DNA of 64,000 nucleotides, taken from assembly GCF_003918875.1 (NCBI RefSeq), contig NW_025766836.1, positions 744,001 to 808,000 on the forward strand, given 5' to 3'. The position numbers were made by a program, and so were the translations under genes. The notes under the pieces are model-generated. The model had not been told where the DNA came from. It saw nothing but the letters and a program-made list of their open reading frames with translations, and did no database searches. Origin of the DNA: Haliotis rubra (Eukaryota). The stretch's first letter is position 1; each line of letters begins with the position of its first letter. This document shows, piece by piece, positions 2,138-55,689 of this stretch.

Positions 2138-2407
2138 ATGACGGACAAGAAGGCGGTGGTGAAGAACGCTGACATGAGCGAAGACATGCAGCAGGATGCA
2201 GTCCAGAGTGCATCAGATGCATTGGGGAAGTACAACATTGAGAAGGACATCGCTGCATACATCAAGAAGGAGTTCGACAAGAAGTACAACCCCACATGGC
2301 ATTGTATTGTCGGACGCAACTTTGGCAGCTACGTCACCCACGAGACCAAGCACTTCATCTACTTCTATCTGGGACAAGTGGCCGTTCTCCTCTTCAAATC
2401 AGGGTGA
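2138..2407 (+). CDS. DYNLL: Dynein light chain LC8 (DLC1)
   Basis: 89 aa with [12 protein letters not shown]...[47 protein letters not shown]; splice acceptor CCCATTTCAG immediately before A-ATG; AATAAA at 2909. Confidence 0.97.
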
Positions 2408-7792: not shown

Positions 7793-8062
7793 TCATCCTG
7801 ATTTGAAGAGGAGAACAGCCACCTGTCCCAGATAGAAGTAGACGAAGTGCTTGGTCTCGTGGGTGACGTAGCTGCCAAAGTTGCGTCCGACAATACAATG
7901 CCATGTGGGGTTGTACTTCTTGTCGAACTCCTTTTTAATGAATGCAGCGATGTCCTTCTCAATGTTATACCTCTCCATAGCTTCAGTGGCGCTGTCGCAA
8001 GCGTCCTGCTGCATGTCCTCGCTCATGTCAGCGTTCTTGATGACGGCTTTTCTCTCACACAT
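7793..8062 (-). CDS. DYNLL: Dynein light chain LC8 (DLC2)
   Basis: Intact 89-aa LC8 ORF; acceptor TTCTTCTTCAG 6 nt upstream of ATG; AATAAA (minus strand) at 7310-7315. Confidence 0.97.
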
Positions 8063-10474: not shown

Positions 10475-10690
10475 CTTACCTGATTTGTGTGAAAAGTCCT
10501 ATGAAAATCGCGGGGATAACTGGCAAGTTGTGATATGGAAACTTTCTAAACGTTACTTTTGGTTACATATCATCCCATAACAACTGTACCACGCTATGAT
10601 TAGACATTCCATTGGTTAAATGCTGCAGTTTGACTGGTTGAGTCGAGTGTTTGCTGTAGGAGGTTTTAACTTCCCGGCATGCAAAACGCG
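10475..10690 (-). promoter_or_regulatory. DLC2 non-coding exon 1 donor and promoter module (X-box-like, CCAAT, SBS/ZNF143-like)
   Basis: Minus-strand donor CAG|GTAAGTG at 10479; ATCCCATAACAAC 10572-10584; ATTGG 10611; TTCCCGGCATGC 10671. Confidence 0.75.
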
Positions 10691-15461: not shown

Positions 15462-15731
15462 TCATCCTGATTTGAAGAGGAGAACGGCCACCTGTCCCAG
15501 ATAGAAGTAGACGAAGTGCTTGGTCTCGTGGGTGACGTAGCTGCCGAAGTTGCGGCCGACAATACAATGCCATGTGGGGTTGTACTTCTTGTCGAACTCT
15601 TTTTTAATGAATGCAGCAATGTCCTTCTCAATGTTGAACTTCTCCATAGCTTGAGTGGCGCATTCACAAGCGTCCTGCTGCATGTCCTCGCTCATGTCAG
15701 CGTTCTTGATGACGGCTTTTCTCTCAGACAT
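15462..15731 (-). CDS. DYNLL: Dynein light chain LC8 (DLC3)
   Basis: Intact 89-aa LC8 ORF; same acceptor context as DLC2. Confidence 0.97.
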
Positions 15732-16049: not shown

Positions 16050-19000
16050 GCGGGCTGGTTGAGAACATGAATGGAAGGCGGACTGGTTGAGAACATGAAT
16101 GGAAGGCGGACTGGTTGAGAACATGAATGGAAGGCGGACTGGTTGAGAACATGAATGGAAGGCGGACTGGTTGAGAACATGAATGGAAGGCGGACTGGTT
16201 GAGAACATGAATGGAAGGCGGACTGGTTGAGAACATGAATGGAAGGCGGACTGGTTGGTAACATGAATGGAAGGCGGACTGGTTGGGAACATGGACGGAA
16301 GGCAGATTGGTTGAGAACATGGATGGAAGGCGGACTGGTTGAGAACATGAATGGAAGGCGGACTGGTTGAGAACATGAATGGAAGGCGGACTGGTTGAGA
16401 ACATGAATGGAAGGCGGACTGGTTGAGAACATGAATGGAAGGCGGACTGGTTGAGAACATGAATGGAAGGCGGACTGGTTGGTTGGAACATGAATGGAAG
16501 GCAGACTGGTTGAGAACATGAATGGAAGGCGGACTGGTTGAGAACATGAATGGAAGGCGGACTGGTTGAGAACATGAATGGAAGGCGGACTGGTTGAGAA
16601 CATGAATGGAAGGCGGACTGGTTGAGAACATGAATGGAAGGCGGACTGGTTGAGAACATGAATGGAAGGCGGACTGGTTGAGAACATGAATGGAAGGCGG
16701 ACTGGTTGAGAACATGAATGGAAGGCGGACTGGTTGAGAACATGAATGGAAGGCGGACTGGTTGAGAACATGAATGGAAGGCAGACTGGTTGAGAACATG
16801 AATGGAAGGCGGACTGGTTGAGAACATGAATGGAAGGCGGACTGGTTGAGAACATGAATGGAAGGCGGACTGGTTGAGAACATGAATGGAAGGCGGACTG
16901 GTTGAGAACATGAATGGAAGGCGGACTGGTTGAGAACATGAATGGAAGGCGGACTGGTTGAGAACATGAATGGAAGGCGGACTGGTTGAGAACATGAATG
17001 GAAGGCGGACTGGTTGAGAACATGAATGGAAGGCGGACTGGTTGAGAACATGAATGGAAGGCGGACTGGTTGAGAACATGAATGGAAGGCGGACTGGTTG
17101 AGAACATGAATGGAAGGCGGACTGGTTGGTAACATGAATGGAAGGCGGACTGGTTGAGAACATGAATGGAAGGCGGACTGGTTGGTAACATGAATGGAAG
17201 GCGGACTGGTTGAGAACATGAATGGAAGGCGGACTGGTTGGTAACATGAATGGAAGGCGGACTGGTTGAGAACATGGATGGAAGGCGGACTGGTTGAGAA
17301 CATGAATGGAAGGCGGACTGGTTGAGAACATGAATGGAAGGCGGACTGGTTGGTAACATGAATGGAAGGCGGACTGGTTGAGAACATGAATGGAAGGCGG
17401 ACTGGTTGGGAACATGAATGGAAGGCGGACTGGTTGAGAACATGAATGGAAGGCGGACTGGTTGAGAACATGAATGGAAGGCGGACTGGTTGAGAACATG
17501 AATGGATGGCGGACTGGTTGAGAACATGAATGGCAGGCGGACTGGTTGAGAACATGAATGGAAGGCGGACTGGTTGAGAACATGAATGGAAGGCGGACTG
17601 GTTGAGAACATGAATGGAAGGCGGACTGGTTGAGAACATGAATGGAAGGCGGACTGGTTGGTAACATGAATGGAAGGCGGACTGGTTGAGAACATGAATG
17701 GAAGGCGGACTGGTTGAGAACATGAATGGAAGGCAGACTGGTTGAGAACATGAATGGAAGGCGGACTGGTTGGGAACATGAATGGAAGGCAGACTGGTTG
17801 GTAACATGAATGGAAGGCGGATTGGTTGGGAACATGGAATGGAAGGCAGACTGGTTGGGAACATGAATGGAAGGCAGACTGGTTGAGAACATGGATGGAA
17901 GGCAGATTGGTTGGGAACATGGATGGAAGGCGGACTGGTTGGGAACATGGATGGAAGGCAGATTGGTTGAGAACATGAATGGAAGGCAGACTGGTTGAGA
18001 ACATGGATGGAAGGCAGACTGGTTGAGAACATGGATGGAAGGCGGACTGGTTGAGAACATGGATGGAAGGCATATGGATGGAAGGCAGATTGGTTGGGAA
18101 CATGGATGGAAGGCAGACTGGTTGGAGAACATGGATGGAAGGCAGATTGGTTGGAACATGAATGGAAGGCAGACTGGTTGAGAACATGGATGGAAGGCAG
18201 ACTGGTTGAGAACATGGATGGAAGGCGGACTGGTTGAGAACATGAATGGAAGGCAGGATTGGTTGGAGAACATGGATGGAAGGCAGATTGGTTGAGAACA
18301 TGGATGGAAGGCAGACTGGTTGGAACATGGAATGGAAGGCAGACTGGTTGAGAACATGAATGGAAGGCAGACTGGTTGAGAACATGGAATGGAAGGCAGA
18401 TTGGTTGAGAACATGAATGGAAGGCAGACTGGTTGGAACATGAATGGAAGGCAGATTGGTTGGGAACATGGATGGAAGGCGGACTGGTTGAGAACATGAA
18501 TGGAAGGCGGACTGGTTGAGAACATGAATGGAAGGCGGACTGGTTGAGAACATGAATGGAAGGCGGACTGGTTGGGAACATGAATGGAAGGCGGACTGGT
18601 TGAGAACATGAATGGAAGGCGGACTGGTTGAGAACATGAATGGAAGGCGGACTGGTTGAGAACATGAATGGAAGGCGGACTGGTTGAGAACATGAATGGA
18701 AGGCGGACTGGTTGAGAACATGAATGGAAGGCGGACTGGTTGAGAACATGAATGGAAGGCATGGAAGGCAGGTTGGTTGAGAACATGGATGGAAGGCGGA
18801 CTGGTTGAGAACATGAATGGAAGGCGGACTGGTTGGTAACATGGATGGAAAGCGGATTGGTTGGGAACATGGACGGAAGGCAGATTGGTTTGGGAACATG
18901 TTAGGTAGGCAGATTGGTTTGGGAACATGTTAGGTAGGCAGATTGGTTGGGAACATGGATGGAAGGCAGATTGGTGTGGGAACATGTTAGGTAGGCAGAT

Positions 19001-19650
19001 CGGTTGTGAACATGGATGGAAGGCAGATTGGTTTTGGAACATGTTAGGTAGGCAGATTGGTTGTGAACGTGCTTTGAAGGCAGATTGGTTTGAGAACATG
19101 GAAGGAAGGCAGATTGGATTGGAACGTGGACGGAAGGCAGATTGGATTGGAACATGAATAAAAGGCAGATTGGTTGGGAACAATGATGGAAGGCAGACTG
19201 GATTGGAACGTGGATGGAAGGCAGATTGGATTGGAACATGAATAAAATGCAGATTGGTTTGAGAACATGGAAGGAAGGCAGATTAGTTGGGAACGTGGAT
19301 GGAAGGCAGATTGGATTGGAACGTGGATGGAAGGCAGATTGGTTGGGGACGTGGATGGAAGGCAGATTGGATTGGAACGTTGATGGAAGGCAGATTGGTT
19401 GGGAACATGGATGGAAGGCAGATTGGTTAGGAACATGGATGGAAGGCAGAGCTTGATTGGGAACATGGATGGAAGGCAGATTGGTTGGGAACGTGGATGG
19501 AAGGAAGATTGGTTGGGAACGTGGATGGAAGGCAGATTGGTTGGGAACATGAATAAAAGGCAGATTGGTTCGGAACGTGCTTTGAAGGCAGATTGTATGC
19601 GAATTGTATGCGAATATGTATGGAAGGCAGATTGGATGAAAACATGGAAA
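16050..19650. repeat. 3.6-kb 28-bp minisatellite (GAACATGAATGGAAGGCGGACTGGTTGA)n in DLC3 intron
   Basis: Near-perfect units 16050-17800, more diverged toward 19650; same family as 8390-9003. Confidence 0.96.
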
Positions 19651-22193: not shown

Positions 22194-23489
22194 CCTACAA
22201 GTACGGAATGTTACCAACGAATACACATGTTACATACGAATCTACCGTTTATCCCGTGATATCATGCAAACTTTTACTTTTATCACCAAGATCAACTTGT
22301 TTTCTGACATTTCAATCAAAAAGAATTCATTATATATCACTATAATAAGGTCTAAACCACGAACTGCAGTGCATCCCTGAATAGAACATTAATATTCGTG
22401 CAGAAAATGTAAAATACACTTACTAATTACCAATATGTTGTCTGGTCTCATCTATGATGACTTCCAAATGGAACACATGTCACGTGTTGTCATTCCACCA
22501 ATCTATTTTAATGTGATCAATTGTTGGTACTTTTGGGAGTTAAAATTTACTTACGAATACAGGTTATTTTGTGTGATATCTTCGTAAACACAGCACAGAA
22601 AATGTTCAGATGTAGCACACGTATATATTGAGGCCCTTTGCACTTGAACTTCGGATATCATTCACTAATGTGTTCATTTGTGGAAACAGCAACATATTCA
22701 ATGGTATTTGTAGGTAACCTGATTTTTTTTACCAAATCAGACTTTGATTTTCTAACATTTTTTCAGATTAAGAAATATTATGTAACGCCATTGCATTTGA
22801 GTACTTTACATATTAATGCTGTAAAAAGTAATACAAAACATAACCTTGTGTTGCATTCACATAAATTGACAGAGTCATTGAAAACTGTATTCGTAGGTAA
22901 CGCAAAAAAATACCACTTGAAAACAAATTACCAAAATTACGAATTAAACCCTAGACAAAATCATTTCAGGGGATTTATTCATGAAATATTTGGCAATCAG
23001 ATTACGTTGTTCACTTTTCGTTGGAATCGACCATATATGGTTGTATGTGCACTTTAAACAATTTCCAATAAAACATACTATAACTCCGACAACCGGCTTC
23101 ACATAAGGAAATCGTCCGGAACGACCTCTGGCGTGACATTACCTAAACTACCATGTATATGATTTTCCCTTCCGCCCAACCCTCTCTGCAATGCAAAAAG
23201 CTCTAATGAAACGACTTTGGATTTGCCTCCGGTTTTGAATCTCCTATATCATTCGGGATACTTTTCAGTTTAGATTGAGTCAGATCTATTTGTTTCTATC
23301 AAAATTACATATTTTCAGCGAATGAGCATTTAGACATCATTGAGGCAGACATGGACAGTAGCACAACAGTGATAGGCGTGACGGTAAATATAATATAAGC
23401 TCGATAGAACTAGAAATCTATATTACAACATTGATTCAACATTTCAGTCTAAATGTGTTTATATACGAATGTGGGGACAGTTTAGTACA

Positions 23490-23715
23490 CTTACCTGACT
23501 TGTGTGAAAAATCCAATGAAAATCTCCGGATAACTGGCAAGTTGTGATATCGAAACCAAATTATTTCATTTCGATGTTAATTTTTGTTACATATCGTCCC
23601 ATAACAACTGTACCACGCTATGATTAGACATTCCATTGGTTAAATACTGCAGTTTGACTGGCTGAGTCGAGTGTTTACTGTAGGAGGTTTTAACTTCCCG
23701 GCATGCAAAACGCGC
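23490..23715 (-). promoter_or_regulatory. DLC3 exon 1 donor and promoter module
   Basis: Donor CAG|GTAAGTG at 23494; GTCCCATAACAAC 23596-23608; ATTGG 23635; TTCCCGGCATGC 23695. Confidence 0.75.
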
Positions 23716-24317
23716 GCATCCCCAAACTCATTCATGACAACCAGCGAGCTCTATGCAGGTAATAGACTACGACGAATAATTATGTGTATGATGCATACAA
23801 TTTCGAGTTTAGTCGGCGTGTTGCGTGTCACAGCACATATGTTGAACGCTTGAATGATCCCGGAACTCAATTCAGAATAAGCTGTGCGAAGCTGAACTGT
23901 TTTACAATATAGGATGTAGTTGATATTCACCGAAAATGATATACCTGCTACATAACTGTGATACGAGAGTTAGCTGGCGCGGCAGTTAGATAATAGTAGG
24001 CCAGGTGTTTCGGTCATTAGCAATGCTTGTTTTCAGTGTAGGTATTTCTTTCTCGTTTGGGGCACAAACGGAATTACACACGCTTGTAAACGATGTGTTA
24101 TATATCCTCGTCATGCTCCTTCCTAACTGCCGTGATACTGCTGGAATATTGTTAAAAGCGGCGCAATACTAAACTCACTCAGTCCTAACGTGAACTGACA
24201 AGAATCCATTATTCGCTATGCTTTGAAATTGCACTGGTTCATCACAATGAATAAGTGAATGGTTGTGTAACCGCTTTGAAATGTATTCCGGTTATACGGC
24301 GCGTCCTCTTAATGTTA

Positions 24318-24524
24318 NNNNNNNNNNNNNNNNNNNNNNNNNNNNNNNNNNNNNNNNNNNNNNNNNNNNNNNNNNNNNNNNNNNNNNNNNNNNNNNNNNN
24401 NNNNNNNNNNNNNNNNNNNNNNNNNNNNNNNNNNNNNNNNNNNNNNNNNNNNNNNNNNNNNNNNNNNNNNNNNNNNNNNNNNNNNNNNNNNNNNNNNNNN
24501 NNNNNNNNNNNNNNNNNNNNNNNN
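24318..24524. other. Assembly gap
   Basis: Run of N at the DLC3/DLC4 unit junction. Confidence 0.99.
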
Positions 24525-25347: not shown

Positions 25348-25617
25348 TCAAACTGATTTGAAGAGGAGAACGGCCACCTGTCCCAGATAGAAATGGATGA
25401 AGTGCTTGGTCTCGTGGGTGACGTAGCTGCCAAAGTTGCGGCCGACAATACAATGCCATGTGGGGTTGTACTTCTTGTCGAACTCCTTCTTGATGTATGC
25501 AGCGATGTCCTTCTCAATGCTGTACTTCTCCAAAGCTTGAGTGGCGCTATCAATAGCGTCCTGCTGCATGTCCTCGCTCATGTCAGCCTTCGTGATGGCG
25601 GCTTTTCTCTCAGACAT
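25348..25617 (-). CDS. DYNLL: Dynein light chain LC8, divergent paralog (DLC4)
   Basis: Intact 89-aa ORF with V7A, K9T, N10K, N33S, Y75H, G89V relative to canonical LC8; acceptor TTCTTCTTCAG 6 nt upstream of ATG. Confidence 0.96.
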
Positions 25618-28144: not shown

Positions 28145-28311
28145 CTTACCTGATTTGTATGGAAGTCCTATGGAAATCGCCAGACAAGTTGTGATATCGA
28201 AACCAAAGTATTTTATTTCGATGTTACCTTTGCTTACATATCGTCCTACAACAACTGCATCACGCTAATATCTGAAATTCCATTGGTTAAATACTGCAAT
28301 CTGAGTGGCTG
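28145..28311 (-). promoter_or_regulatory. DLC4 exon 1 donor and proximal promoter (degenerate X-box, CCAAT); SBS displaced to 30437
   Basis: Donor at 28149; GTCCTACAACAAC 28243-28255; ATTGG 28282. Confidence 0.68.
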
Positions 28312-30430
28312 CCATGCTTGGGGCGGATACAGGGACTGGGCAGATGTCCACCTTGGCAGAATTTCTTCAACCTAAACAATGGGACAATGAGAACGGTGGA
28401 TGCCCATCAGATGCCGTTATTTGAAAAATATCCCCGGTAGTTCTAGTCTAATGTATTCTAGCAATGTAAGCTTTGTTTATGCGTTTATGGTATGATAACT
28501 GATGCCATTTGATCCTATTTCTGTGTTTTGTTACCTTGACATGTGACTAGTTCATGTAACAATGTGATGTCTTTTGACCTATTACATTAAAAACCAAAGT
28601 TTGATTTATTTGAATCCCTAAATTAAATCAACCTAACTTTGCCATTGCTAGAAAAGTCTAAACAAATTGCTTAGATAAGTATACAGTTTTAACTTTAGAG
28701 CACATGCTGTATTTGTTATGCAGCAATGAAGTTCCGTTCATATGCTCAAAACAGCATCAAGGCAATTAAAATTGCAATACAATACAGCGATTACTACTCT
28801 CTTGCTGTAACCCATGTTTGGTGGTGTAAACCTACACCTGTTTATTTGTTTATTCACTTTATGGTCAGTTAATGAAATTATAACAGGTATAATTAGTAGT
28901 AACACCACTCAGATTTCCCGACAAAGGTCCCCATATGTCTGGAGTAAATACTCAACATTATAAATTAAGGTCTGGTGTGGCATATGTATTACGTGTTATG
29001 TAATATGCGCATGGATGTGCGGCAAGAGGAATTATCAAACAAAACCAAACAAACATCAATCAAAGGATTAACCGATAACATAACACGTTAATTGATTAAT
29101 AACTTCTATCTTGCACAAAGGATTTGTCAAAAGGTTGTGTACAGTGTATATATATCTAGATTTACTAACGTATACTGAATACACCCTGTCGTAAAGTGCC
29201 TGTGTAAAAACAACGCCCTTCCTTCAAAGGATTGTGGGGCGGTAGGGTAGCCTAGTGGTTAAAGCTTTGGCTCGTCACGCCGAAGACCCGGATTCGAATC
29301 CCCACATGGGCACAATGTGTGAAGCCCATTTCTGGTGTCCCCCGCCGTGATGTTTCTGAAATATTGCTAAAAGCGGCGTAAAACCAAAACTCAGTCAGTC
29401 CAAGGATTGACCGGCAATACGTTGATTGATTGCTCATTGTTGTATAACTAATTACTTTCAAAATAATGGTGGACATCATGCAAATAGTTGTCACATATGC
29501 GATCTTGGGTGACCAATGAGACTATACACCAATGTGAAAAACCTGAAACAGTCACGTGACCAGTAGAGAAATTATCACTAGTTATTACTTGTTTGAGTGG
29601 CAGTTAGAAGCTGTTTTCTAACGGCATTAGCATCTACACCGAAACGTCACATCGATTGCAATAAAGACGTTGTCTGTCCATAAAAACGTCCCTGTTTATC
29701 ACCAGTTATAACGATTTATACAACTTTAGCATATTTCACTGTTAAAAGACAGATGATATGGAACAGATTGGCACATCGTTCCTTTATGTGGATATTGATG
29801 GATACATTCCTCGATCAAGGTAAGGGCCTGATGTTATTGTTATAAATTTATTCGGTATTAATTTGAATATCTGCATTTTGTTTACATTCTTTTCTTGTAG
29901 CATCCCACAGAATCATTCTACTTCATTTCTTTGCGCCGTGAAGTTTAATGAGACAGACAACATACACAAGGTCGAACTTAGGATGCGTGTGTGAAATATG
30001 ATTCACGAAGGCAATTTATAAAATGTTTAGATATTTCAGTCATGTTATAAATTCACTAAACAGATCGTTCCAAAATCCATAAACATATATCAATAAATAT
30101 TTAGGATTATAAGACAAAGATGTGAAGCCGTACATTGACTTTGACATATTTTCCCACTGGCAGATGAAGTTAAACTTCAATTTGTTTTCATTTGTTATCA
30201 TAATAATGAAGATGGAAATATAAATGAATAAATGAAATTGCATCTTCTTTGTTGATCAAAGTCAGGATATACATATCATATACATATACTACCAATTGAA
30301 CTTACGGGTGGCGCATTTAGAGATAGCAACTCAGTCAAGAATTCTGGGATATCGTCCGGGTACTCACGGGGGATAAACAATAACAAAAGCAACAACCAGT
30401 CCCAGGGGAATTGCTCTGGATCAGTGTCCC
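28312..30430. other. ~2.1-kb insertion in the DLC4 promoter (second copy 34796-36760 in DLC5)
   Basis: Interrupts the CCAAT-SBS segment that is contiguous in DLC2/3/6. Confidence 0.8.
29235..29400 (+). mobile_element. SINE family A, DLC4-specific
   Basis: Flanked by CAAAGGATT / CAAGGATT; empty site CTTCAAAGGATTACCGG at ~35681 in the DLC5 copy. Confidence 0.85.
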
Positions 30431-31441: not shown

Positions 31442-32204
31442 AGTATGGTATAAAACCTCACTCACTCACACACTCACACACTCGCTCGCTCGCCCGACTT
31501 ACTCACTAACCATTAGGCTACCCCACCTCCCCTTAATCGAGCATGATCAAGACGATCCAGTAGTGTGTATTCGGTGAAAGGTCACCAAGCATTCAATGAA
31601 ACATTGCTTTGACAATAATAGTCAACAAATGTTGCTGGGATTTATTCGAATCCGGAATCAAAATATATCTTAATGGAACAGCATAGACATTTATGCAAAG
31701 TTGGCTTTAAATCATTTATTTTCCCCAAAACTCAACAACAGGTGAACCAGAAATTGTGATATAAAAGATAAACAACTCATTTGAATATTTTCTTTTGACA
31801 TATCTTGTTAGGATATGAAATGGGTTGACATGATTTTAAACAAAAGGTTTATTTACTTTAGAAAGATCAACAACAAAACGACGAACACAATAATCATTTG
31901 CAAACATTCATAAAAGTCTGAGATTAAAGACGTATCAAGGAATGACATAGGAAGAAATGACAAAGGTGCAAAATGTCATTTGAAAGGCACAAAATGATAT
32001 CTTCATTGGATGGTATATGGTCTGTAAGATTTTGCATTGTTCACTTATACAGACAATATAATATTTTGTATTTCAATATTCCCAAGAATTTCAAGGTATT
32101 TGTGTGAAATATTTATGCATTATATCCGAGATGGGAGATATAGACTTCAGCACTTGACAGTGGTAACTTTATCTAGTGTCTTCATAATCTTCATTGTTCA
32201 TTGC

Positions 32205-32474
32205 TCAAACTGATTTGAAGAGGAGAACGGCCACCTGTCCCAGATAGAAATGGATGAAGTGCTTGGTCTCGTGGGTGACGTAGCTGCCAAAGTTGCGGCC
32301 GACAATACAATGCCATGTGGGGTTGTACTTCTTGTCGAACTCCTTCTTGATGTATGCAGCGATGTCCTTCTCAATGCTGTACTTCTCCAAAGCTTGAGTG
32401 GCGCTATCAATAGCGTCCTGCTGCATGTCCTCGCTCATGTCAGCCTTCGTGATGACAGCTTTTCTGTCAGTCAT
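32205..32474 (-). CDS. DYNLL: Dynein light chain LC8, divergent paralog (DLC5)
   Basis: Intact 89-aa ORF, identical to DLC4 except residues 2, 3 and 7. Confidence 0.96.
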
Positions 32475-34642
32475 GGTCTCCTGAAGAACAAAAACAGTTT
32501 CTCCGAATCAAAATGCAGCTTGCGTCTAATTTGTAAACCGAGGAGTGGGTGAGTGAGTGAGTTTAGTTTTACGCCGCTTCCAGCAATATTCCAGCAACAT
32601 CACGGCGGAGACACAAGAAATGTGTTTCACACATTGTACCCATTTGGGGAATCGACCCTGGAATGACGAGTGAACGCTTTAACCACTAAAGTACTATCGG
32701 AAATACAAAAATACTTAGGTTTTTTAGCTGTTACTCTGTATCCCTAACATTCACACAATTACAAATAGCCTATGTCGAAATAACCCACATCGACCTTACA
32801 GTCGATTTCAGCTTTAGTTTAAAGACTAAGCACACAGTTTTATTGAAATGTCCACAAACATATTCGAGATCCCTGCCCCTTTTTTATGTTCCGTAAAACA
32901 TATGTTTCACTGGATGAACTACCTGTACGTCTCTCACTTTCAGATTAAGATTCTTCAGTGTTTTTACTGGTGAGATGCAATCAATTATAATCACACTATA
33001 ATCGGTGATCAGTAAACACACCAAGACAGTCTAATTGCAGTTTCACAACTGAGCTTGACGCTAAACCTCGCGGCAATATCCGTTTTCGATTGTCGTCTTT
33101 TGTGACAAGCAGAAAATGTTGAGGACCAAATCTAACCCGGAATCCACACGGGTGAAGTTATCAGGTACATGTATATGTTCGTGAGTGAGTGAGTTTAGTT
33201 TTAGCAATATTCCAGCAATATCGCGCCGGAGACACTCATAAACATTCTCATGAATGATCTTTCCTCCGTGAACTAGTTCACCCGGAAACATTAATCGTTA
33301 ACATGTATTACCCCAGAAGGTTCCCTTATTATGAGAGCCTATAACGAACCTTAGACATAAGTGGATATGGTTGTAAAGTGCACTTTGCACAATTTCCAAC
33401 AAATTGTTATAATTCCTACAACTGGTTTCACATAAGGAAATCGTATGGAGCTACCGCTTTCGTGACAAGCGAACACTTTGACCAGGCTTACCCCGCCCCT
33501 AAGGTAAGTGTGGAGTCGAAAGGCAAGGGTTTACAAATGATTGCCATCAGAGACCAATAAAATGAGCACTGGGACCTGTGTTCGTTCGTTCGTTTGTTTG
33601 CACGCACGCATCAATAATCAAGCTATATAGGACCGCCGTCTGTGAAGATTTCAGCCTAGACCAGACAATCTGTAATAAGTGATCTGGTCGACTTTACGTC
33701 ATAGCTGAATCACTGGCTTGCCTGGTCCATTCTACATTATTTATGGACTAACTCGATGAATCATGAATGTTACTGAGGTTTACAAACCGTTCCTAACCAC
33801 AGCGATATCCCGACACTGCGGACCAATTCTGTTTGTGAGTGCGTGAGTGAGTTAAGAGTTTAACTCACATCAGCAGTATTTCAGCTATATGGTGACTGAT
33901 TCTATTTGCACCAGGCGACGCAGATCTATTACAGACAAGAACAAAACAATCATCTAGAAAAGGATCAATATAAACAGTCAGAGGTGCCTTTGTTTTCATA
34001 TAAATATGTAAAGGCTTTTTCATTCAAACAAAATGAAAGTCATGGTTGAGACGAATCCCAGTTCTGCAAAACTGTTTAGGTGTGTCGCCGCCATTACTAT
34101 CCGGGTCAATATAGATACCGGTAGAGTCAGTTAGAAAACTAGATTAACCGATGATCAGTTTGGTTAGGCCACAAGTTGTTGTTCATTGTTCGTCAGATTG
34201 TTTAGTTCAAACAGTATTTTCGAATACGTGGCATTTTCACTAACATTCTATCCATTTTGTACAGTATATATGATGACACTGTAGTCTGTCCCTCGACTAT
34301 ATGATTTTCCCTTCCGCCCAAACCTCTCTCAATGCAAAAAGCCCTAATGAAACGATTTTAGATTTGCCTCCTGTTTTGAATCTCCTATATTATTCGGGAT
34401 CCTTTTCAGTTTAGATTGAGTCAGATCTATTTGTTTCTATCAAAATTTCATATTTTCAGCGAATGAGCATTTAGACATCATTGAGGCAGACATGGACAGA
34501 AGGACGCGACGCGGGACAACAGTGATAGGCGTGACGGTAAATAACAGAGATATAAGAGCGATAGAACTAGAAATCTATATTACAACATTGATAAAACATT
34601 TCAGTCTAAATGTGTTTATATAAGAATGGACAGTTTAGTCCA

Positions 34643-34795
34643 CTTACCTGATTTGTATGGAAGTCCTATGAAAATCGCCTGGCAAGTTGTGATATCGAAA
34701 CCAAATTATTTCATTTCGATGCTACCTTTGCTTACATATCTGTATCACGCTAATATCAGAAATTCATTGGTTAAATGCTGCAATTTGACTGGCTG
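34643..34795 (-). promoter_or_regulatory. DLC5 exon 1 donor and proximal promoter (X-box deleted, CCAAT retained); SBS displaced to 36765
   Basis: Donor at 34647; CTTACATATC|TGTATCACGC junction at 34740/34741; ATTGG 34766. Confidence 0.68.
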
Positions 34796-37700
34796 TCATG
34801 CTTGGGGCGGACACAGGGACTGGGCAGATGTCCACCTTGGCAGAATTTCTTCAACCTAAACAATGGGACAATGAGATCGGTGGATGCCCATCAGATGCCG
34901 TTATTTGAAAATATCCCCGGTAGTTCTAGTCTAATGTATTCTAGCAGAGTAAGCTTTTTTATGCGTTTATTGTATGATGACTGATGCGATTTGATCCTAT
35001 TTCTGTGTTTTGTTACCTTGACATGTGACTAGTTCATGTAACAATGTGATGTCTTTTGACCTATTACATTAAAAACCAACGTTTGATTTATTTGAATCCC
35101 TAAATTAAATCAACCTAACTTTGCCATTGCTAGAAAAGTCTAAACAAATTGCTTAGGTAAGTATACAGTTTTTAACTTTAGAGCACATGTTGTATTTCTT
35201 TTGCAACAATGAAGTTCCGTTCATATGCTCAAAACAGCATCAAGGCAATTAAAATTGCTATACAATACAGCGATTACTACTCTCTTGCTGTAACCCATGT
35301 TTGGTGGTATAAACCTACACCTGTTTATTTGTTTATTCACTTTATGGGCAGTTAATGTACTTATAACAGGTATAATTAGTAGTAACACCACTCAGATTTC
35401 CTGAAAAAATGTCTGGAGTAAATACTCAACATTATAAATTAAGGTCTGGTGTGGCAAATGTATTACGTGTTATGTAATATGCGCAAGGATGTGCAGCAAG
35501 AGGAATTATTCGCTGAGTTAAAAAACAAACATCGATCAAAGAATTAGCCGATAACACGTTGATTGATTCATTACTTTTATCCAACGGATTTATCAAAATG
35601 TAGTGTTTATGTGCGTAGATTTACTAACATATACTGAATACACGCTGTCGTAAAATGAGTCTGTAAAAACAACGCCCTTCCTTCAAAGGATTACCGGAAA
35701 ATACGTTGATTGATTGCTCATTGGTGTCTAACTAAATTACTTTCAAAAGAATGGTGGACATCATGCAAATAGTTGTCACATATGCGATCTTGGGTGACCA
35801 ATGAGACTATACACCAATGTGGAAATCCTGAAACAGTCACGTGACCAGTTGAGAAACTATCACTAGTTATTACTTCTTTGAGTGGCAGTAAGAAGCTGAT
35901 TTGCTAACGGCATTAGCATCAACAGCGAAACGTCACATCGATTGCAATAAAGACGTTGTCTGTCCATAAAAACACATTCCTGTTATAACGGTTCAAACAT
36001 GTTTTGCATATTTGACTGTTAAAAGGGACATGGAACATGTTTCTTTGTCAGCAGCAGATGAATGGCACATCGTTCTTTATGTGGATATTGATGGATACAT
36101 TCCTCGAACAAGGTAACGGCTTGATGTTATTGCTATAATTGTATTCGGTTTTAACTTGAATATCTTCATTTTCTTTATATTCTTTTCTTGTAGCATCCAA
36201 TAGAATCATTCCACTTCATTTCTTGCGCCGTGAAGTTTGATGAGACAGACAACAGACAACAAGGTCGCTCTTAGGGCGTGTGTGTGAAATATGATAAACG
36301 GAGGCAATTTATAAAATGTCTAGATATTTCAGTCATGTTATAAATTCACTAAACAGATCGTGTACATTTTATGAAGATCCAAAATGCATAAAAATATATG
36401 AATAAATTATTTAGGATTATATGACAAAAATCTGAAGACGTATATTGACTTCGGGGCTTTTTTTCAGTCCTAACATATTTTCCCACTGGCAGATGAAGTT
36501 TAACTTCAATTTGCTTTTCATTTTTTATCATAATAATGAGGATGGAAATATTAATGAGTAAAAGAGATTGCATCTTCTCTGTTGATCACTGTCAGGATAT
36601 ACATATCATATACATATACTACCAATTGAACTTACGGGTGGCGCATCAGAGATCGCAACCCAGTCAAGAATTCTGGGATACCATCCGGGTACTCGCGGGG
36701 GATAAACAATTATAAAAGCAACAACCAGTCCCAGGGAATTCCTCTGGATCAGTGTCCCTTTCCCTTCCCGGCATGCTAAACGGGCGCATCCCCAAACTCA
36801 TTCATGACAACCAACGAACTGTATGCAGACTAAGACGAATATTTAGGTGTATGGTGCATGAAATTTCGACTTTAGCTGACGGGTTGTGTGTCAAAGCACC
36901 TATGTTCAACGTTTGAATGATCCTGGAACTTCAGAATAAGCTGCGTGAAGCTGAACTATCTTATAATGTGGTTGATATACACCGAAAGTGATATACCTCC
37001 TATATAACCGTGACACGAGAGTTGCTGACCCCTTAAGATATCAGGTCGCCATGTGTTTCGGTCATTAGCAATGCTTGTTTTCAGTCTACTTATTTCTTTC
37101 TCGTTTAGAGTACAAACGGAATCACACACGCTTGTAAACCATGTGTTATATATCCTCGTCATGCTCCTACCTAACTGCCGTGATATTGCTGGAATATTGT
37201 TAAAAGCGGCGCAATACTAAACTCACTCAGTCCTAACGTGAACTGACAAGAATCCATTATTCGCTATGCTTTGAAATTGCGCAGATTCATCACAATAAAA
37301 AAGTGAATGGTTGTGTAACCGCTTTGAAATGTATTCGGGTTATACTCACTCACTCTCTCGCTCACTCGCTCCGCCGCCATATAGCTGGAAAATTGCTGAG
37401 TGCGGCGTACAACTAAACTCACTCACATTTGTTTTATAAATGGGTTTTGATACCATGCCTTACCGTGTCAAAGGAAACAAGAGTGTGATAGAAAGTTTCG
37501 TGTGATAAATTGGCTGTGTGGTGATTGCCTATCTTGATTCAACCACAGTGGGTCGTATTATTCTGTCGTGGCCGCGCACATTGAAACGCAAACGATGTAT
37601 TTATCAGATGCACGTGATATGCCACGTGACTGGCTGTTTCTTGCGTCAGTTTGTTTTTAGTTTTCATTTCACGTTGTTAGCTTGATGTTGGAAGACAGAC

Positions 37701-39509: not shown

Positions 39510-41602
39510 GGCATCTGATAATGTCAACCTGACAGAATATCAAAAAGAAGATGACTGATATAGCTTTGTTCATGAGAGAAGAAATACGAAACAGTTTTCA
39601 GGACAGTTTTAACAACATAGATAGACAAGAAGTTCCATCTGAAGCAGGAACAACACATTGCGTGAATGGGATAATTGTCCAGCCACCATCTGTGTCACGC
39701 ACACCTCCAAGACCTGCACCAGTCACTTTCAACAGAGAGAAAAGACGTAGTATTGAGCCCTCTAAAAGGTTCTACACTGTTGGAAAAAAGAAGTGGCCCC
39801 CTCCCTTGAAACCTGATCTCAATCTTTCTCAAACTCCCCATGACTCAACCTTCTCAGCACAACAACACAATCTGTTATGGATCCTCGCTATTCAAACATC
39901 GTTTGAGTTGCAGTTGTTTTGGGTCAAGTCCTATTTGCAAAGGCAACTGAGCTAGTACGGAGAGACAATAAACGCTTCAGAAATGTCGTGGTATTGGTAA
40001 TGATGGGCAACTTGCACACACTTAGCACTTTGATGTCAATTATTGGAAAGTTGCTGGACTTCACGACCTTGTTATAGAGTCAGGAATAGTTGCTGAAGGA
40101 TCGATCAAGAGTATAAGAAGGCAAGCACTACAACCGAGCTGTTCGTCTTCACAAACTTACTCATGAAGCAATGGTGAGATTGATTAGGCTGGAATTCGTG
40201 GAATGGCTTCAGCAAACACGCCCTGATGTTCAACAAACTGAACTTGTCCTTGCAAAACGAGGTGAGCTTCATCAATGTATAAGTCATGAAACCTAAAGAG
40301 AAATCCTTGAGAGAAGTTCCTGGATGGGATGGAAATCTGCACATTGTTCACAACCTATCTCAATGTTTTGCGCCATGAAAGGGGACACCTAGCAGCCATT
40401 TGGATGACCAATATCGATTTGGTGGAAATCTTGCTTGGGCTCATACATGTAGAAAAAGAAGGCAATTGGAACCTCACCTCGTTTGTATTCGTGACATGAT
40501 ACGTTGGTGCTTTTCCATGAACAAAACAAACTATGCAAGATGCCGTCCTGTTTACTATGCACAGAAACATCTCCAGAATTGGACAACCATGTCCATAACA
40601 GAGGTTTTTCAGTTCAGCTTAGCAAAAGAAATCCTTTTGGACGATTTGCTGTTGACCAAGCCACAGAGGAAACAGCCAACACAAACGGCCGGTGGAACTC
40701 GAGGCTTCAGCATGAAACCAGGAACTGTGTCTTGATACTATCTGACAGCAGAGCGCAGAGCCCTGTAGCAACTTCGTCATCTAGAGTCGTTCAAATCGCA
40801 AAGCACGTGCCATGCTGACCTGGAGAAAACACGAACACAGAAGGACGAATGTGATGTCCAAACACTTGTTGACATTCCCTGTAGTATTGGACCAATCTAT
40901 TTGTTGGAAATCACACAGAACTGGTTTGTATATCATCAAGGACTGCAGCTACATCTCAAGTATCATTGGATCTTTTGACTGCACACCAGAAAGGACTAGA
41001 TGCATACAACAAATTCAAGGAAAAACTAGGGGAGGGGGGAAGGCTTTCATAACACACTAAAGTAACTCAAATTGAAAACATTCACTGACATGAACAAGAA
41101 ATCACCAAAAGTTCCTGACAAACACATAGTGTGGAAGGCAGACAAAAGTTTATTTGGAAAGATGGTGCTCATTGCCCCAAACCGAAAATTGGACATGAGA
41201 AATGTCCTCTGTCATCCTCTGGGACCGTTGTCATGGTCACTGGCAAATAGTGATGGAACACTTAAAAAGACCAACAAAGCCATGCTAGCAAGCAAAGTGT
41301 CTTTAGCTGAAACCACCCCATAACAAAGTGCTGCACTCCTTGATGTCATGGCAATCCTCCTGAATCTTCATGGCGACTACCATACTTTTGATGTGCTCTC
41401 CAAGCATTCCAGACGTCACAGATGGACTTGACTGGGAGAAAGATACCAGTGGGAATCTACTGAAGCGGATGACAGGACCTCCAGCTCGAGAAATTGTTTT
41501 GGAACTCATTGGAATGTTCAAGAAAACTGTCGACCATCGGATTGTGTATGTCTCTTGAATGGTATGAAGTGTCCAGCAGCATGCAAGTTGGTAGACTGCT
41601 CC

Positions 41603-42402
41603 AACAATGATGATGATGACGACAACAATGATGATGATGACGACGACGATGATGATGATGACAACAATGATGATAATGACGACGATGATCATGATGATGA
41701 CAACAATGATGATGGAGGCGACGACAACAATGATGATGATGATGACAACAATGATGATGATGATGATGACAATGATGATGGTGACGACAACAATGATGAT
41801 GATGACGACAACAATGATGATGGTGACGACGACGATGATGATGACAACAATGATGATGTGACGACAACAATGATGATGATGACGACAACAATGATGATAA
41901 TGACGACAATGATGATAATGATGACAACACTGATGATGTTGACAACACTGATGATGATGACAACTCTGATGATGATGACGACAACAATGATGATGATGAT
42001 GACAACAATGATGATGGTGACGACAACAATGATGATGATGACGACAACAATGATGATGATGACAACTCTGATGATGATGACAACAATGATGATGGTGACG
42101 ACAACAATGATGATGATGACGACAACAATGATGATGATGACGACGACAATGATGATGACAACAATGATGATGATGACGAAAACAATGATGATGACGACGA
42201 CGATGATGATGATGATGACAACAATGATGATGGTGACGACAACAATGATGATGATGACGATGATGATCATGATGATGATGATGACAACAATGATGATGGT
42301 GACGACAACAATGATGATGATGACGACGACGATGATGATGATGACAACAATGATGATGGTGACGACAACAATGATGATGATGACGACGATGATCATGATG
42401 AT
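41603..42402. repeat. Compound (GAT/GAC/AAC) trinucleotide microsatellite
   Basis: ~800 bp of ATG/ACG/ACA triplets directly after the transposase Cys-rich domain. Confidence 0.95.
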
Positions 42403-42637
42403 AGTCAATAACCACCCATGGCAATCAGCGAAGAATCCTTAAAATTATTGTGTAAGGCTTATTACATTGTAAACCTCACGACTCATGAAGTAATTCAATA
42501 TCTACATATCAACATCTCTTTCAACGATACCACTTGTTGAGATTTTGTGAATATGTGGTATTTAGAGAAAGGTATTTCGTAGGAGTGAGTGAAGGAGTAT
42601 GCTTTACACCACTTATATAGCCGGGCGTGGAACACTA

Positions 42638-47253: not shown

Positions 47254-47523
47254 TTATCCTGATTTGAAGAGGAGAACGGCCACCTGTCCCAGATAGAAGT
47301 AGATGAAGTGCTTGGTCTCGTGGGTGACGTAGCTGCCAAAGTTGCGGCCGACAATACAATGCCATGTGGGGTTGTACTTCTTGTCGAACTCCTTCTTGAT
47401 GTATGCAGCGATGTCCTTCTCAATGTTGTATTTCTCAAGGGCTGCTGTGGAGCAGTCTACAGCGTCCTGCTGCATGTCCTCGCTCATGTCAGCGTTCTTG
47501 ATGACGGCTTTTCTCTCAGACAT
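47254..47523 (-). CDS. DYNLL: Dynein light chain LC8 (DLC6)
   Basis: Intact canonical-like 89-aa LC8; acceptor T-tract TAG ending 47528; AATAAA (minus strand) at 46763-46768. Confidence 0.97.
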
Positions 47524-48656: not shown

Positions 48657-48895
48657 CTTACGTTTTATGCTGTGTTGAAACTGGTTCCAATGTTAATCTC
48701 GAAGTGATTGCATTAATGTCACAACTTCAACTGCAGGTCAATATATACGCACCGGGGCAAATGTCAGGTAATAATCCCATGGCAACCACGCCACGCTATG
48801 AAAAGCAATTCTATTGGTTAATCGCCGTATGGTGACTGGCTGAGGCAGGTGTACTCTTTAGGGGGTTCTAACTTCCCGGCATGCCAAAAGCGCGC
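48657..48895 (-). promoter_or_regulatory. DLC6 exon 1 donor and promoter module
   Basis: Donor GTAAGTG at 48661; GTTGCCATGGGAT X-box (48774-48786); ATTGG 48813; TTCCCGGCATGC 48873. Confidence 0.78.
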
Positions 48896-49433
48896 GATAT
48901 CAAACTTTTGTATACAAAAGCTGCTTCACCTTGGTGATGAGTTCCGCTTCAGTGACTTACGCGCTTCAAAGCGTAGTTTTCTTTCACTGGCGGGGTTACT
49001 GGGTTCGATAAATGGTTATGCTCCCTGTTTTGGAAAATATCAAGTATTCATGGGCATTTATTTTAAATTCAGCCCGGATTACCACCATACTCTTTTCAAG
49101 GCTTATAACATTTAGATTAACATATGAATACCAAATAACCGAAATGGTGGAGTAGGTAGGAGCTGACTTGCAGTATATTGCTTCGAATCTCAGGATCGGG
49201 AATATACTTCTGATTAAAACCCGATTTATTAATTTATCTGATATTTAACAGTAAACAACGCCGATCAAATGTCACTTGTCATGTCAGAGCTTTCGGTGAT
49301 CTCTATAAAGAAAAAAGAAAAGCGTGAACATGAATCTCAGGATGTAGTACTAATCTGCCATAAAGACATTTTTAACAACCTGTTACTCTGTTGTCATTCA
49401 AACTCTCTCCGGGTTTTCTCACGGGATGAGATA

Positions 49434-52082: not shown

Positions 52083-53257
52083 TCACAGAAAATACACCTC
52101 TTTTTCCAAGGCGAATCGTTCCTCGTCAGTCGTTAAGTCTTTATACTTGGCAATCTCCCCGACCCTTTTGCATTTCACGAACCACGTGACCAGCTCGCTG
52201 CCCAGGGCATCCACCAATGCCTCGTCCTGTTCCAATTCCACCAGAGCTTCAGACAGAGAGTTGGGGAGGGTCTCGGCGTTCTCCCTCTGCCCCGGGGGTG
52301 GACACTCCAGTTCGTTCATCACACCGTCGAGTCCAGCGGCAATGGTTGACGCCACGATGAGGTAAGGGTTGCTTTTTCCGCTAGGCAGTCTGTTCTCGAT
52401 GTATGTACTCGACGGACCGTCGTTCTTGATTCGGAAACATGCTCCACGATCTTCTATACCCCAGGTTACTGTTGACGGGAAGTACGGCTGATGAAGTCGC
52501 CTGTAGCAGTTAACGGTGGGACTGGTAAAAGCGCACAGGGCTCTACTGTGCTTCATAATGCCAGCAATCCACTGTTTGGCAATAAGAGATAGATTATCAG
52601 GAGCGACAGCATCATAGAAAAGGCTGTCTCCAGATTTGTTCCAGAGAGAAAAATTAAAATGAGCTCCAATTCCAGTGGGTGTTTTCTCATTGTCCGGCTT
52701 TGACATGAACGTGACAGTAACATTTTTCGAATCTGACATTTCCATGAGACCTTGTTTCAGGTTTAACGCCATATCCGGGCACTCTATGCCATATTTGGGT
52801 CTGGTCACTGCTTCAAACATCCCAGGACCAAACTCCGGGTGGTAACGTTCTACATCGATGTTGGATCTTCTGAAGTTTTTGTCAAAATGAAGTAAAATGT
52901 TGGCGTACTTGTTCAGTGTCCTTTGGCAGTAAGCTTCTTCGCCATCAAATACTGGTTCCAGTGTTTCCTTATTCACCATTCTAAATTCAATTTCATAACC
53001 AGAATACAATTTGCATCCAAGTTCGTCCAACCTGTTCAGCTGTTTCCTAGCAACGTATCGCGGACACGCTTCCTGCGGAACACCGCCTTTCTTCCATCGA
53101 GGTTCGCACAACATTTCAGCGACCTTGACCCCATCGGCAACCCATGGGACCGGCCTCAGCGTTTCAACGTCGGGAAAACACAACATGTTGCCAGCGTTGT
53201 TGTTCCTGGGGTCATCCATTAAAACTTGTTCTGTTCTTGGACCAGCTAACAGGAACC
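52083..53257 (-). CDS. LGSN: Glutamine synthetase I-like / lengsin-like protein, exon 2 (catalytic domain)
   Basis: GYEIEF, HPEFGPGMFE, TFMSKP, GAHFNFSLW, NCYRRL, TWGIEDR, IENRLP, NPYL motifs; acceptor TTTTTTCAG ending 53258 joins exon 1 in frame (441 aa total); AATAAA at 51690. Confidence 0.92.
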
Positions 53258-53979: not shown

Positions 53980-54024
53980 CTCATATGACGACGTGCATGC
54001 ATGCGTGCGTGCGTGCGTGCGTGC

Positions 54025-54068
<44 letters not shown>

Positions 54069-55502: not shown

Positions 55503-55689
55503 CGTGATAATGAGATCGGACGAAATCACATCTTATCAGAACACTGTCCATCAGCTTCTGTTGCTGAATGCTACTTCTGCATCACTTATATAGGCTACCA
55601 TTATTGGGTAATTAAATGCCATATGTTACATGTTGGGGGTAATTGTCTACGTTCTTTGCTCGACCGCTATTGGTCTAACGAGGGAAGGG

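What the first reader, a model, noticed from the sequence alone, without database searches (positions are those of the whole stretch)
34731..34770. Stepwise loss of the X-box, ending in a precise 13-bp deletion in DLC5
Seen (plus strand): DLC6 ATCCCATGGCAAC, DLC2/3 RTCCCATAACAAC, DLC4 GTCCTACAACAAC. In DLC5 exactly these 13 bp are missing (CTTACATATC|TGTATCACGC) while the flanks, CCAAT box and splice donor remain. Inference: a graded release from RFX control across paralogs, predicting a gradient in ciliated-cell expression.
Basis: partly seen in the sequence, partly recalled or inferred. Interest (0 to 1): 0.7.

Follow-up and report, generated by a model that had tools for sequence, protein, structure and literature searches.

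The report
Promoter deletion in duplicated abalone LC8 gene
One of seven neighbouring copies of a small dynein-associated (LC8) gene in the blacklip abalone has lost 13 bases of its promoter, removing a short control element kept in most other copies; this looks like ordinary decay of a spare gene copy, and nothing yet shows that the cilia regulator RFX is involved.

Summary
The window is Haliotis rubra DNA with six LC8 (DYNLL) genes, plus a seventh 7 kb upstream. Five share a promoter, and DLC5 lacks exactly the 13 bases quoted.

- None of the sites fits any published X-box consensus. Each has at most one RFX-type half-site, and degenerate consensi show no gradient.
- The apparent gradient matches the general divergence of the core promoter.
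- The 13-bp gap is one of 20 indels of 8 bp or more between the DLC4 and DLC5 repeat units.
- DLC4 and DLC5 share a larger lesion: a ~2-kb high-copy repeat insertion that replaces a family-wide promoter block.

New here: the deleted element belongs to a family-wide motif, GTTRYY-AW-GK. It lies 31-51 nt downstream of the proximal CCAAT box, on the gene strand, in DLC0, DLC2, DLC3, DLC6 and an unlinked copy. H. rufescens and H. cracherodii orthologues have it, and so does a Mytilus LC8 gene. It is probably functional, but the factor that binds it is unknown.

I found no expression data, binding data or independent read support. The scan has noted weak X-box-like promoter modules elsewhere in this genome (s1-320417, s1-352122). 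Most likely reading: degenerative or neutral promoter change in a young tandem duplicate.

The parts
34740..34741 (-). Junction of the 13-bp deletion in the DLC5 core promoter (gene strand ...GTGATACA|GATATG...)
34766..34770 (-). DLC5 proximal CCAAT box (AACCAATGA; 1 nt deleted just after it compared with the other copies)
34642..34647 (-). DLC5 splice donor GTAAGT ending the non-coding exon 1 (exon ends at 34648)
32205..32474 (-). DLC5 coding exon (89-aa LC8 protein, intact ORF including the stop codon)
28243..28255 (-). DLC4 copy of the element, GTTGTTGTAGGAC (the half-site remains; the AWG part is mutated)
23596..23608 (-). DLC3 copy of the element, GTTGTTATGGGAC
10572..10584 (-). DLC2 copy of the element, GTTGTTATGGGAT
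48774..48786 (-). DLC6 copy of the element, GTTGCCATGGGAT (perfect RFX-type half-site + AT + GG; a TATATAT box lies about 38 nt downstream)
34796..36763 (-). About 2-kb insertion of high-copy repeat sequence directly upstream of the DLC5 CCAAT region. It replaces the family-wide GTTAAAACCTCCTA block and displaces the GCATGCCGGGAAG (SBS-like) block to 36764 and beyond
   Evidence: (word depth in the thousands)
28312..30430 (-). The same insertion in DLC4, so it is older than the DLC4/DLC5 duplication
25348..25617 (-). DLC4 coding exon (differs from DLC5 at 4 of 267 nt)
47254..47523 (-). DLC6 coding exon
15462..15731 (-). DLC3 coding exon
7793..8062 (-). DLC2 coding exon
2138..2407 (+). DLC1 coding exon. 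Its promoter lies outside the window at C1946:740826 (L014:3827) and lacks the element

Best explanation
In the assembly, the gap is a real, lineage-specific 13-bp deletion in the core promoter of DLC5. DLC5 is the youngest member of a tandem array of LC8-type dynein light chain genes in Haliotis rubra. The deletion removes DLC5's copy of a short element, GTTRYY-AW-GK. In most LC8 promoters this element sits on the gene strand 31-51 nt downstream of the proximal CCAAT box. The element equals the first ten positions of an RFX X-box (one half-site, the spacer and GG), but it never has the second half-site. Inferred: it is a functional activator site that works together with the CCAAT box (NF-Y). 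An RFX-family protein bound to a half-site is the leading candidate, not a shown one. DLC4 and DLC5 had already suffered a ~2-kb repeat insertion that removed another family-wide promoter block. DLC4 then mutated the element and DLC5 deleted it. The apparent 'graded' series is what ordinary divergence and gene conversion among tandem duplicates produce. The simplest reading is neutral or degenerative promoter decay, or rewiring, in redundant copies, not a tuned release from RFX control.
For: Gene family and species: the 89-aa ORFs are 89-100% identical to each other. They are 96-97% identical to named molluscan LC8 proteins carrying PF01221. The neighbouring gene is 100% identical to a named Haliotis rubra protein on a contig of the same length as the window's. 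Deletion. Indel background: 52 indels, 20 of them 8 bp or more, in the 6.6-kb DLC4/DLC5 alignment. Shared earlier lesion; repeat depth. Gradient equals general divergence. No fit to published consensi: with PMC2375033. Family-wide element: present at CCAAT+31 in DLC2, DLC3 and DLC6. Present at +51 in DLC0 of H. rubra, H. rufescens and H. cracherodii, with a G/A change that keeps GTTRCY. Present at +38 in the unlinked C2757 copy, inside a 50-nt block identical in H. rufescens. Present at +44 in Mytilus edulis and M. trossulus LC8a. Background rate of the 10-mer is about 1 per 9.5 kb on both strands, counting the promoter hits themselves. With the published 6-mer half-site GTTRYY (286 hits in the window, both strands), finding it on the gene strand in 4 of 5 independent promoter lineages has a binomial probability of roughly 3e-4 to 7e-3, depending on the interval chosen. 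That figure is my own arithmetic, and the interval was chosen after seeing the data.
Against: I have no transcription start sites, expression data or binding data, so 'promoter element' and 'decay' are inferences. The 10-mer pattern was derived from the same sites it describes. In Mytilus the annotated gene model starts at the CCAAT box, so there the element may lie in the transcribed leader. Bulinus and Elysia LC8 loci show no such core within 8 kb upstream. DLC4 and DLC5 keep intact ORFs, with dN/dS of 0.26-0.44 against the other copies. They are therefore not obviously dying genes, and their promoter changes could be adaptive. The deletion was not confirmed in independent reads.
Confidence: 0.6

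Rival explanations
1. The element is a working RFX X-box in DLC6 that was weakened step by step (DLC2/3, then DLC4) and finally deleted (DLC5). This would give a graded loss of RFX-driven, ciliated-cell expression across the paralogues.
For: DLC6 has a perfect half-site with the canonical AT spacer and GG. Strict-consensus mismatches rise from DLC6 (2) to DLC2-4 (3) to DLC5 (5). The DLC0 orthologues differ by G/A at the position where RFX half-sites tolerate R. LC8 is an axonemal and IFT dynein component, and dynll1 marks multiciliated cells in Xenopus (PMC10081853).
Against: No site fits any published X-box consensus, and a second half-site is absent everywhere. Degenerate consensi give no gradient. 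Sites as close as DLC6's to the strict consensus occur about 300 times in the 64-kb window. Laurencon et al. state that the presence of an X-box alone does not predict RFX dependence. The gradient equals the general promoter divergence. In C. elegans no dlc (LC8-type) gene is among the reported DAF-19-dependent genes. In mammals the main DYNLL1 regulator is ASCIZ/ATMIN.
Confidence: 0.15
2. The element is a functional site for a factor other than RFX, for example the dedicated LC8 regulator ASCIZ/ATMIN or another CCAAT-coupled factor. Its loss, together with the repeat insertion, adaptively rewires DLC4/DLC5, whose proteins carry unusual substitutions (Y75H, G89V, K9T/N10K). That would be regulatory neofunctionalisation rather than decay.
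For: The element is conserved across old paralogues and species, yet never forms a full X-box. ASCIZ is the conserved transcriptional regulator of LC8 genes in flies and mammals (PMC5963919, PMC4197704). DLC4 and DLC5 keep open reading frames with dN/dS below 1.
Against: I could not retrieve an ASCIZ DNA motif from the held literature, so nothing links the sequence to ASCIZ. Between DLC4 and DLC5 there are 3 non-synonymous changes and 1 synonymous change (dN/dS 0.71, tiny counts), which fits relaxed constraint. No expression data exist.
Confidence: 0.15
3. The gap is an assembly error or a rare allele of the sequenced individual, not a fixed feature of the species.
For: Only the probable source sample has contig depth next to the site. 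The two other samples laid (X5, X3) do not cover 34510-34683. No second haplotype copy exists in the assembly.
Against: Thirteen bases in non-repetitive, non-homopolymer sequence is not a typical consensus error. No insertion at 34740 appears among the listed differences for X1. DLC4 and DLC5 differ by many comparable indels.
Confidence: 0.05

Closest known systems
RFX X-box (ciliary gene promoter motif; consensi GTNRCC N0-3 RGYAAC and RYYNYY N1-3 RRNRAC)
   Same: In DLC6 the first ten positions (GTTGCC AT GG) are identical to the canonical palindrome. The element lies close to the core promoter. The variation seen between copies (GTTGCC, GTTGCT, GTTACT) is of the kind RFX half-sites tolerate.
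   Different: The second half-site is missing in every copy and species examined, and all six published consensi fail. The element has a fixed orientation on the gene strand, unlike a palindrome. No evidence of RFX dependence exists.
X-Y module of MHC class II promoters (an RFX-bound X1 half-site-like box acting with an NF-Y-bound CCAAT/Y box at fixed spacing). Recalled from my own knowledge, not tested here
   Same: An RFX-type half-site is paired with a CCAAT box in a fixed relative orientation and at short spacing (26 nt in DLC2, DLC3 and DLC6).
   Different: The spacing varies from 26 to 46 nt among LC8 promoters. The module is inverted relative to the gene. The vertebrate RFX5-RFXAP-RFXANK complex is not known in molluscs. 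This is a resemblance only.
ASCIZ/ATMIN-driven transcription of DYNLL1/ctp (LC8 autoregulatory loop)
   Same: It is the known dedicated control of LC8 promoters in flies and mammals, so a family-wide LC8 promoter element is what such a system would need.
Cis-regulatory decay and subfunctionalisation of tandem gene duplicates (duplication-degeneration-complementation)
   Same: These are young tandem copies in which promoter elements are lost by small deletions and transposon insertion, while the coding sequence is kept or homogenised by gene conversion.
   Different: No partitioning of expression has been shown here.

Membership tests
RFX X-box | 13-15 bp imperfect inverted repeat fitting a published consensus (RYYNYY N1-3 RRNRAC down to RTNRCC N1-3 RGYAAC; PMC2375033) | tested here: not met
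   the best fits are 1 mismatch to the most degenerate consensus for DLC2, 3, 4 and 6, and 2-3 mismatches to the strict one. The window holds 1453 sites at 1 mismatch to the degenerate consensus, and about 300 at 2 or fewer to the strict one.
RFX X-box | At least one canonical half-site GTTRCY / RGYAAC | tested here: met
   DLC6 has GTTGCC. DLC0 has GTTACT or GTTGCT, and Mytilus has GTTGCT. DLC2-4 (GTTGTT) and C2757 (GTTGTC) meet only the looser GTTRYY.
RFX X-box | Location in the proximal promoter | tested here: inconclusive
   The element lies 26-46 nt downstream of a CCAAT box and near TATA-like boxes. No transcription start site is known. The ATG is 1.3-8 kb away because of a 5'UTR intron.
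RFX X-box | Conservation at the same place in orthologues | tested here: inconclusive
   Conserved for DLC0 in three abalone species and for the C2757 copy in two. Orthologues of DLC2-6 could not be retrieved.
RFX X-box | Binding by an RFX protein and RFX-dependent, ciliated-cell expression | not testable with these tools
   No RNA run held the stretch. The contigs laid give no paralogue-specific transcript evidence.
LC8 / DYNLL dynein light chain (Pfam PF01221) | About 89-aa protein with high identity to named LC8 proteins | tested here: met
   96-97% identity to Mytilus, Bulinus and Elysia 'dynein light chain' proteins carrying PF01221. All six ORFs are intact.
NF-Y CCAAT box | RRCCAATSR core in the proximal promoter | tested here: met
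   AACCAATGG/AG in DLC2-4 and DLC6, and AACCAATGA in DLC5 after the 1-nt loss. This is a sequence match only.

The most novel reading that the evidence does not exclude
An ancient, orientation-fixed module pairing a CCAAT box with an RFX-type half-site is part of LC8 promoters from abalone to mussels. It would tie LC8 output to an RFX-family (or ASCIZ-like) factor. In H. rubra the lineage-specific copies DLC4 and DLC5, whose proteins have an altered ligand groove, were released from this control in steps: repeat insertion, point changes, then the 13-bp deletion. That would be a natural allelic series for how a hub-protein gene is uncoupled from the ciliary programme.
Probability: 0.15. Interest if true: 0.5.

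Novelty: new member of a known kind. Interest (0 to 1): 0.3.

Why it matters
If the element is functional, the abalone LC8 array offers naturally occurring promoter variants: intact, point-mutated, deleted, and carrying a transposon insertion. All sit next to nearly identical coding sequences. That is convenient material for asking how LC8 genes are controlled outside flies and mammals, and whether RFX or ASCIZ is involved. As it stands, it is an ordinary example of cis-regulatory divergence among young tandem duplicates. It also warns that X-box-like matches are common by chance in this genome.

Tried and rejected
1. Read support and expression. One run search found no RNA holder. Read laying on 31900-37100 was dominated by high-copy repeats. 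It gave no contig across 34740 in the independent samples, no exon1-exon2 joint and no paralogue-specific RNA.
2. Orthologous DLC2-6 promoters in other abalone.
- The exact proteins of DLC5 and DLC6 are not on record elsewhere.
- The 90% protein clusters hide abalone members.
- The H. asinina orthologue of the neighbouring glutamine-synthetase-like gene has no LC8 gene within 10 kb.
- The H. rufescens and H. cracherodii DLC0 loci hold only DLC0 and one convergent, unannotated LC8 copy, with no recognisable promoter inside the flank.
3. Other molluscs. Metagenome-derived near-identical LC8 contigs share only the coding sequence. Bulinus and Elysia loci show no GTTRCY-AW-R core upstream.
4. The 13-mer as a second Staf/ZNF143 (SBS) core. 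Only TCCCA matches the consensus as I recall it, so I rejected this.
5. The element as an upstream ATG in a Kozak context (GCCATGG in DLC6). Rejected as a family feature, because DLC0 and C2757 have no ATG there.
6. An ASCIZ/ATMIN DNA motif. It is not given in the text of the held papers.
7. A perfect X-box consensus match 10 kb upstream of the C314 LC8 copy. It lies inside a reverse-transcriptase ORF and is a chance hit.
8. No position weight matrix for RFX was used, because none was available from a tool. Scoring is at the level of consensus mismatches only.

Full report
WHAT IS THERE. The window is Haliotis rubra contig C1946:744001-808000. The glutamine-synthetase-like ORF at 52083-53219 is 100% identical to a named H. 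rubra protein on a contig of the same length.

The window holds six intact 89-codon LC8/DYNLL genes:
- DLC1, 2138-2407 (+)
- DLC2, 7793-8062 (-)
- DLC3, 15462-15731 (-)
- DLC4, 25348-25617 (-)
- DLC5, 32205-32474 (-)
- DLC6, 47254-47523 (-)

A seventh copy, DLC0, lies 7 kb upstream of the window. Two unlinked copies lie on contigs C2757 and C314. Each clustered gene has a non-coding exon 1, a 5'UTR intron of 1.3-8 kb, and a single coding exon whose acceptor sits just before the ATG.

THE OBSERVATION. All four quoted 13-mers are at the stated places, and the DLC5 junction reads as quoted. In a five-way promoter alignment, DLC5 has a single gap of exactly 13 columns where the others read as follows:
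- DLC6: GTTGCCATGGGAT
- DLC2: GTTGTTATGGGAT
- DLC3: GTTGTTATGGGAC
- DLC4: GTTGTTGTAGGAC

The gap placement is ambiguous by one G. The CCAAT box, the TAGCGTG block, the GTAAGT donor, the acceptor and the ORF are retained. DLC5 also lost one base next to the CCAAT box and four bases after the donor. Because four paralogues keep the segment, this is a deletion in DLC5.

I could not confirm it independently. Of the runs laid, only X1, probably the source sample, has depth beside the site, and no contig spanning 34740 was listed. The assembly holds no second haplotype copy.

IS IT AN X-BOX? I scored each site, on both strands and with spacers of 1-3, against the six consensi of Laurencon et al. 2007 (PMC2375033).
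- None fits any consensus.
- All four sites are one mismatch from the most degenerate consensus. The 64-kb window holds 1453 sites at one mismatch to that consensus (89 more fit it exactly).
- DLC6 is two mismatches from the strict RTNRCC N1-3 RGYAAC. About 300 sites in the window are at least that close.
- Under GYTNYY-RRNRAC, DLC3 and DLC4 score better than DLC6.

What DLC6 does have is a perfect half-site followed by the canonical spacer and GG (GTTGCC AT GG). The second half-site is absent. The same paper warns that the presence of an X-box alone does not predict RFX dependence. A perfect consensus match 10 kb upstream of the C314 copy turned out to lie inside a reverse-transcriptase ORF.

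IS THE DECAY 'GRADED' AND MOTIF-SPECIFIC? The identities are as follows:
- In the block from 35 nt upstream of the CCAAT box to the motif, DLC6 is 70% identical to DLC2/3 and 58-62% to DLC4/5.
- In the 13-mer, DLC6 is 85%, 77% and 62% identical to DLC2, DLC3 and DLC4.
- DLC3 against DLC4 is 11/13 in the motif and 74-85% in the flanks.

So the motif follows the general divergence of the promoter.

The copies are also not a simple series. Upstream of and through the motif, DLC3 groups with DLC2. Further downstream it alternates between DLC4/5-like and DLC2-like stretches, which marks gene conversion or unequal crossing-over. The coding sequences are homogenised as well. DLC0 and DLC6 differ at 5 of 267 nt with unalignable flanks. 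DLC4 and DLC5 differ at 4 of 267 nt, while their non-coding DNA differs by 6-15%.

HOW UNUSUAL IS THE DELETION? The DLC4 and DLC5 repeat units align over 6.6 kb at 94% identity. They differ by 52 indels, 20 of which are 8 bp or more. Another 13-bp gap is among them. One such event falling somewhere in a ~150-bp core promoter is not improbable under neutrality.

A LARGER, EARLIER LESION. DLC4 and DLC5 share an insertion of about 2 kb (28312-30430 and 34796-36763). It lies between the GCATGCCGGGAAG block and the sequence just upstream of the CCAAT box. It replaces the block GTTAAAACCTCCTA, which every other LC8 promoter keeps. The inserted DNA has word depths in the thousands in all DNA runs, so it is high-copy repeat sequence.

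WHAT THE ELEMENT IS. The grammar GTTAAAACCTCCTA ... CCAAT ... (CCAAT) ... TAGCG is shared by DLC0, DLC1, DLC2, DLC3, DLC6 and the C2757 copy. DLC0 and C2757 keep it in H. rufescens, and DLC0 also in H. cracherodii.

I then scanned the 130 nt after the proximal CCAAT box in each promoter. A gene-strand element GTTRYY-AW-GK is found at:
- +31 in DLC2, DLC3 and DLC6
- +51 in DLC0 of all three abalone species (GTTACTAAGG or GTTGCTAAGG)
- +38 in C2757 of both species (GTTGTCAAGT, inside a 50-nt identical block)
- +44 in Mytilus edulis and M. trossulus LC8a (GTTGCTATGT)

It is absent in DLC1, mutated in DLC4 and deleted in DLC5. Across 275 kb of fetched DNA the 10-mer occurs 29 times on both strands, about 11 of them these promoter sites.

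With the published half-site GTTRYY alone, presence on the gene strand in 4 of 5 independent promoter lineages has a binomial probability of roughly 3e-4 to 7e-3. That is my own arithmetic.

Caveats:
- The interval was chosen after seeing the data, and the 10-mer pattern was derived from the same sites.
- In Mytilus the gene model begins at the CCAAT box, so there the element may be transcribed.
- Two heterobranch gastropods, Bulinus and Elysia, show nothing comparable within 8 kb upstream.

I conclude that the deleted bases belong to a probably functional, family-wide LC8 promoter element that resembles half an X-box.

MECHANISM.
- Shown: the deletion, the insertion, the family-wide element and the lack of a full X-box.
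- Inferred: the element is an activator site acting with the CCAAT box, and its loss, after the insertion, lowers or changes DLC5 transcription.
- Candidate factor: an RFX-family protein on a half-site is plausible, given the G/A tolerance at the R position and the resemblance to the X-Y arrangement of MHC class II promoters, which I recall from my own knowledge. ASCIZ/ATMIN, the known dedicated LC8 regulator (PMC5963919, PMC4197704), is an untested alternative.
- Against a strong prior for RFX: in C. elegans no dlc (LC8-type) gene is among the DAF-19-dependent genes reported (PMC3112216). However, dynll1 marks multiciliated cells in Xenopus (PMC10081853).

STATE OF THE GENES. DLC4 and DLC5 keep open reading frames. 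They carry shared unusual substitutions (K9T/N10K, N33S, Y75H, G89V) and have dN/dS of 0.26-0.44 against the other copies, which themselves show 0.06-0.26. Between DLC4 and DLC5 there are 3 non-synonymous changes and 1 synonymous change. This fits relaxed constraint or a changed function, and I cannot tell which.

VERDICT. The most likely reading is ordinary cis-regulatory decay or rewiring in young tandem duplicates. Earlier notes of this scan describe similar weak X-box-like promoter modules elsewhere in this genome. They also note the same cluster, the promoter grammar and the DLC4/5 substitutions.

The N run at about 24.3-24.5 kb was left untouched. 

Noticed in passing
window 47257-47523 versus L002:1501-1767 (C1946:736754-737020): The DLC0 and DLC6 coding sequences differ at only 5 of 267 nt (dS 0.08), and the similarity starts right at the ATG while the flanks are unalignable. 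DLC4 and DLC5 differ at 4 of 267 nt against 6-15% in non-coding DNA. This points to gene conversion confined to the coding exon.
   Followed up: partly
window 23396-23896 (DLC3 promoter, exon 1 and start of the intron): DLC3 is a mosaic. Its informative sites agree with DLC2 through the promoter and then alternate between DLC4/5-like and DLC2-like blocks. This indicates unequal crossing-over or conversion among the tandem copies.
   Followed up: partly
window 10670-10700, 23694-23724, 48872-48905; L012:3969-4010; L028 around 4310-4345: Upstream of the GTTAAAACCTCCTA block sits a conserved block (GCGCGC.TTTTGCATGCCGGGAAG; CCGTTGTCAATGCATACTGGGATG in the C2757 copy). Its reverse complement resembles a Staf/ZNF143 binding site. 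That comparison is from memory and was not tested.
   Followed up: no
window 8370-9060 and 15895-19650: Large arrays of a 28-bp satellite. The second, about 3.7 kb long, fills most of the DLC3 5'UTR intron. It gives long spurious ORFs and strong GC skew.
   Followed up: no
L023 and L024 (H. cracherodii and H. rufescens DLC0 loci): Within 10 kb of DLC0, these species have only one further LC8 copy. It is unannotated, convergent and 5.5 kb downstream. H. rubra has DLC1 and DLC2 in the same span, which suggests a lineage-specific expansion of the array in H. rubra.
   Followed up: partly
L016:12167-12181 and L017:16822-16836: A full X-box (GTTACT GCA/TCA GGCAAC) is conserved between Mytilus edulis and M. 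trossulus downstream of the LC8 gene. It probably belongs to another gene.
   Followed up: no
L016:1105 and L017:3597: A CATGGCAAC core (the reverse complement of GTTGCCATG) lies about 500 nt upstream of the ATG of the second Mytilus LC8 gene. It is conserved in both species, sits in AT-rich and probably intronic sequence, and has no CCAAT box nearby.
   Followed up: no
window 4082-5977 and 11171-12163: Reverse-transcriptase-like ORFs and Tc1/mariner-like transposase ORFs lie between the LC8 copies.
   Followed up: no
window 41303-42442: About 1.1 kb of 9- and 21-bp periodic repeats give His-, Asp/Asn- or Ser-rich ORFs in several frames.
   Followed up: no
window 52083-55529: A glutamine-synthetase-like (lengsin-type) gene lies next to DLC6. 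Its closest relative outside H. rubra is in H. asinina (80% identity), where no LC8 gene lies within 10 kb.
   Followed up: partly
window about 24300-24500: A run of N (an assembly gap or masked stretch) between DLC3 and DLC4. It was left as it is.
   Followed up: no
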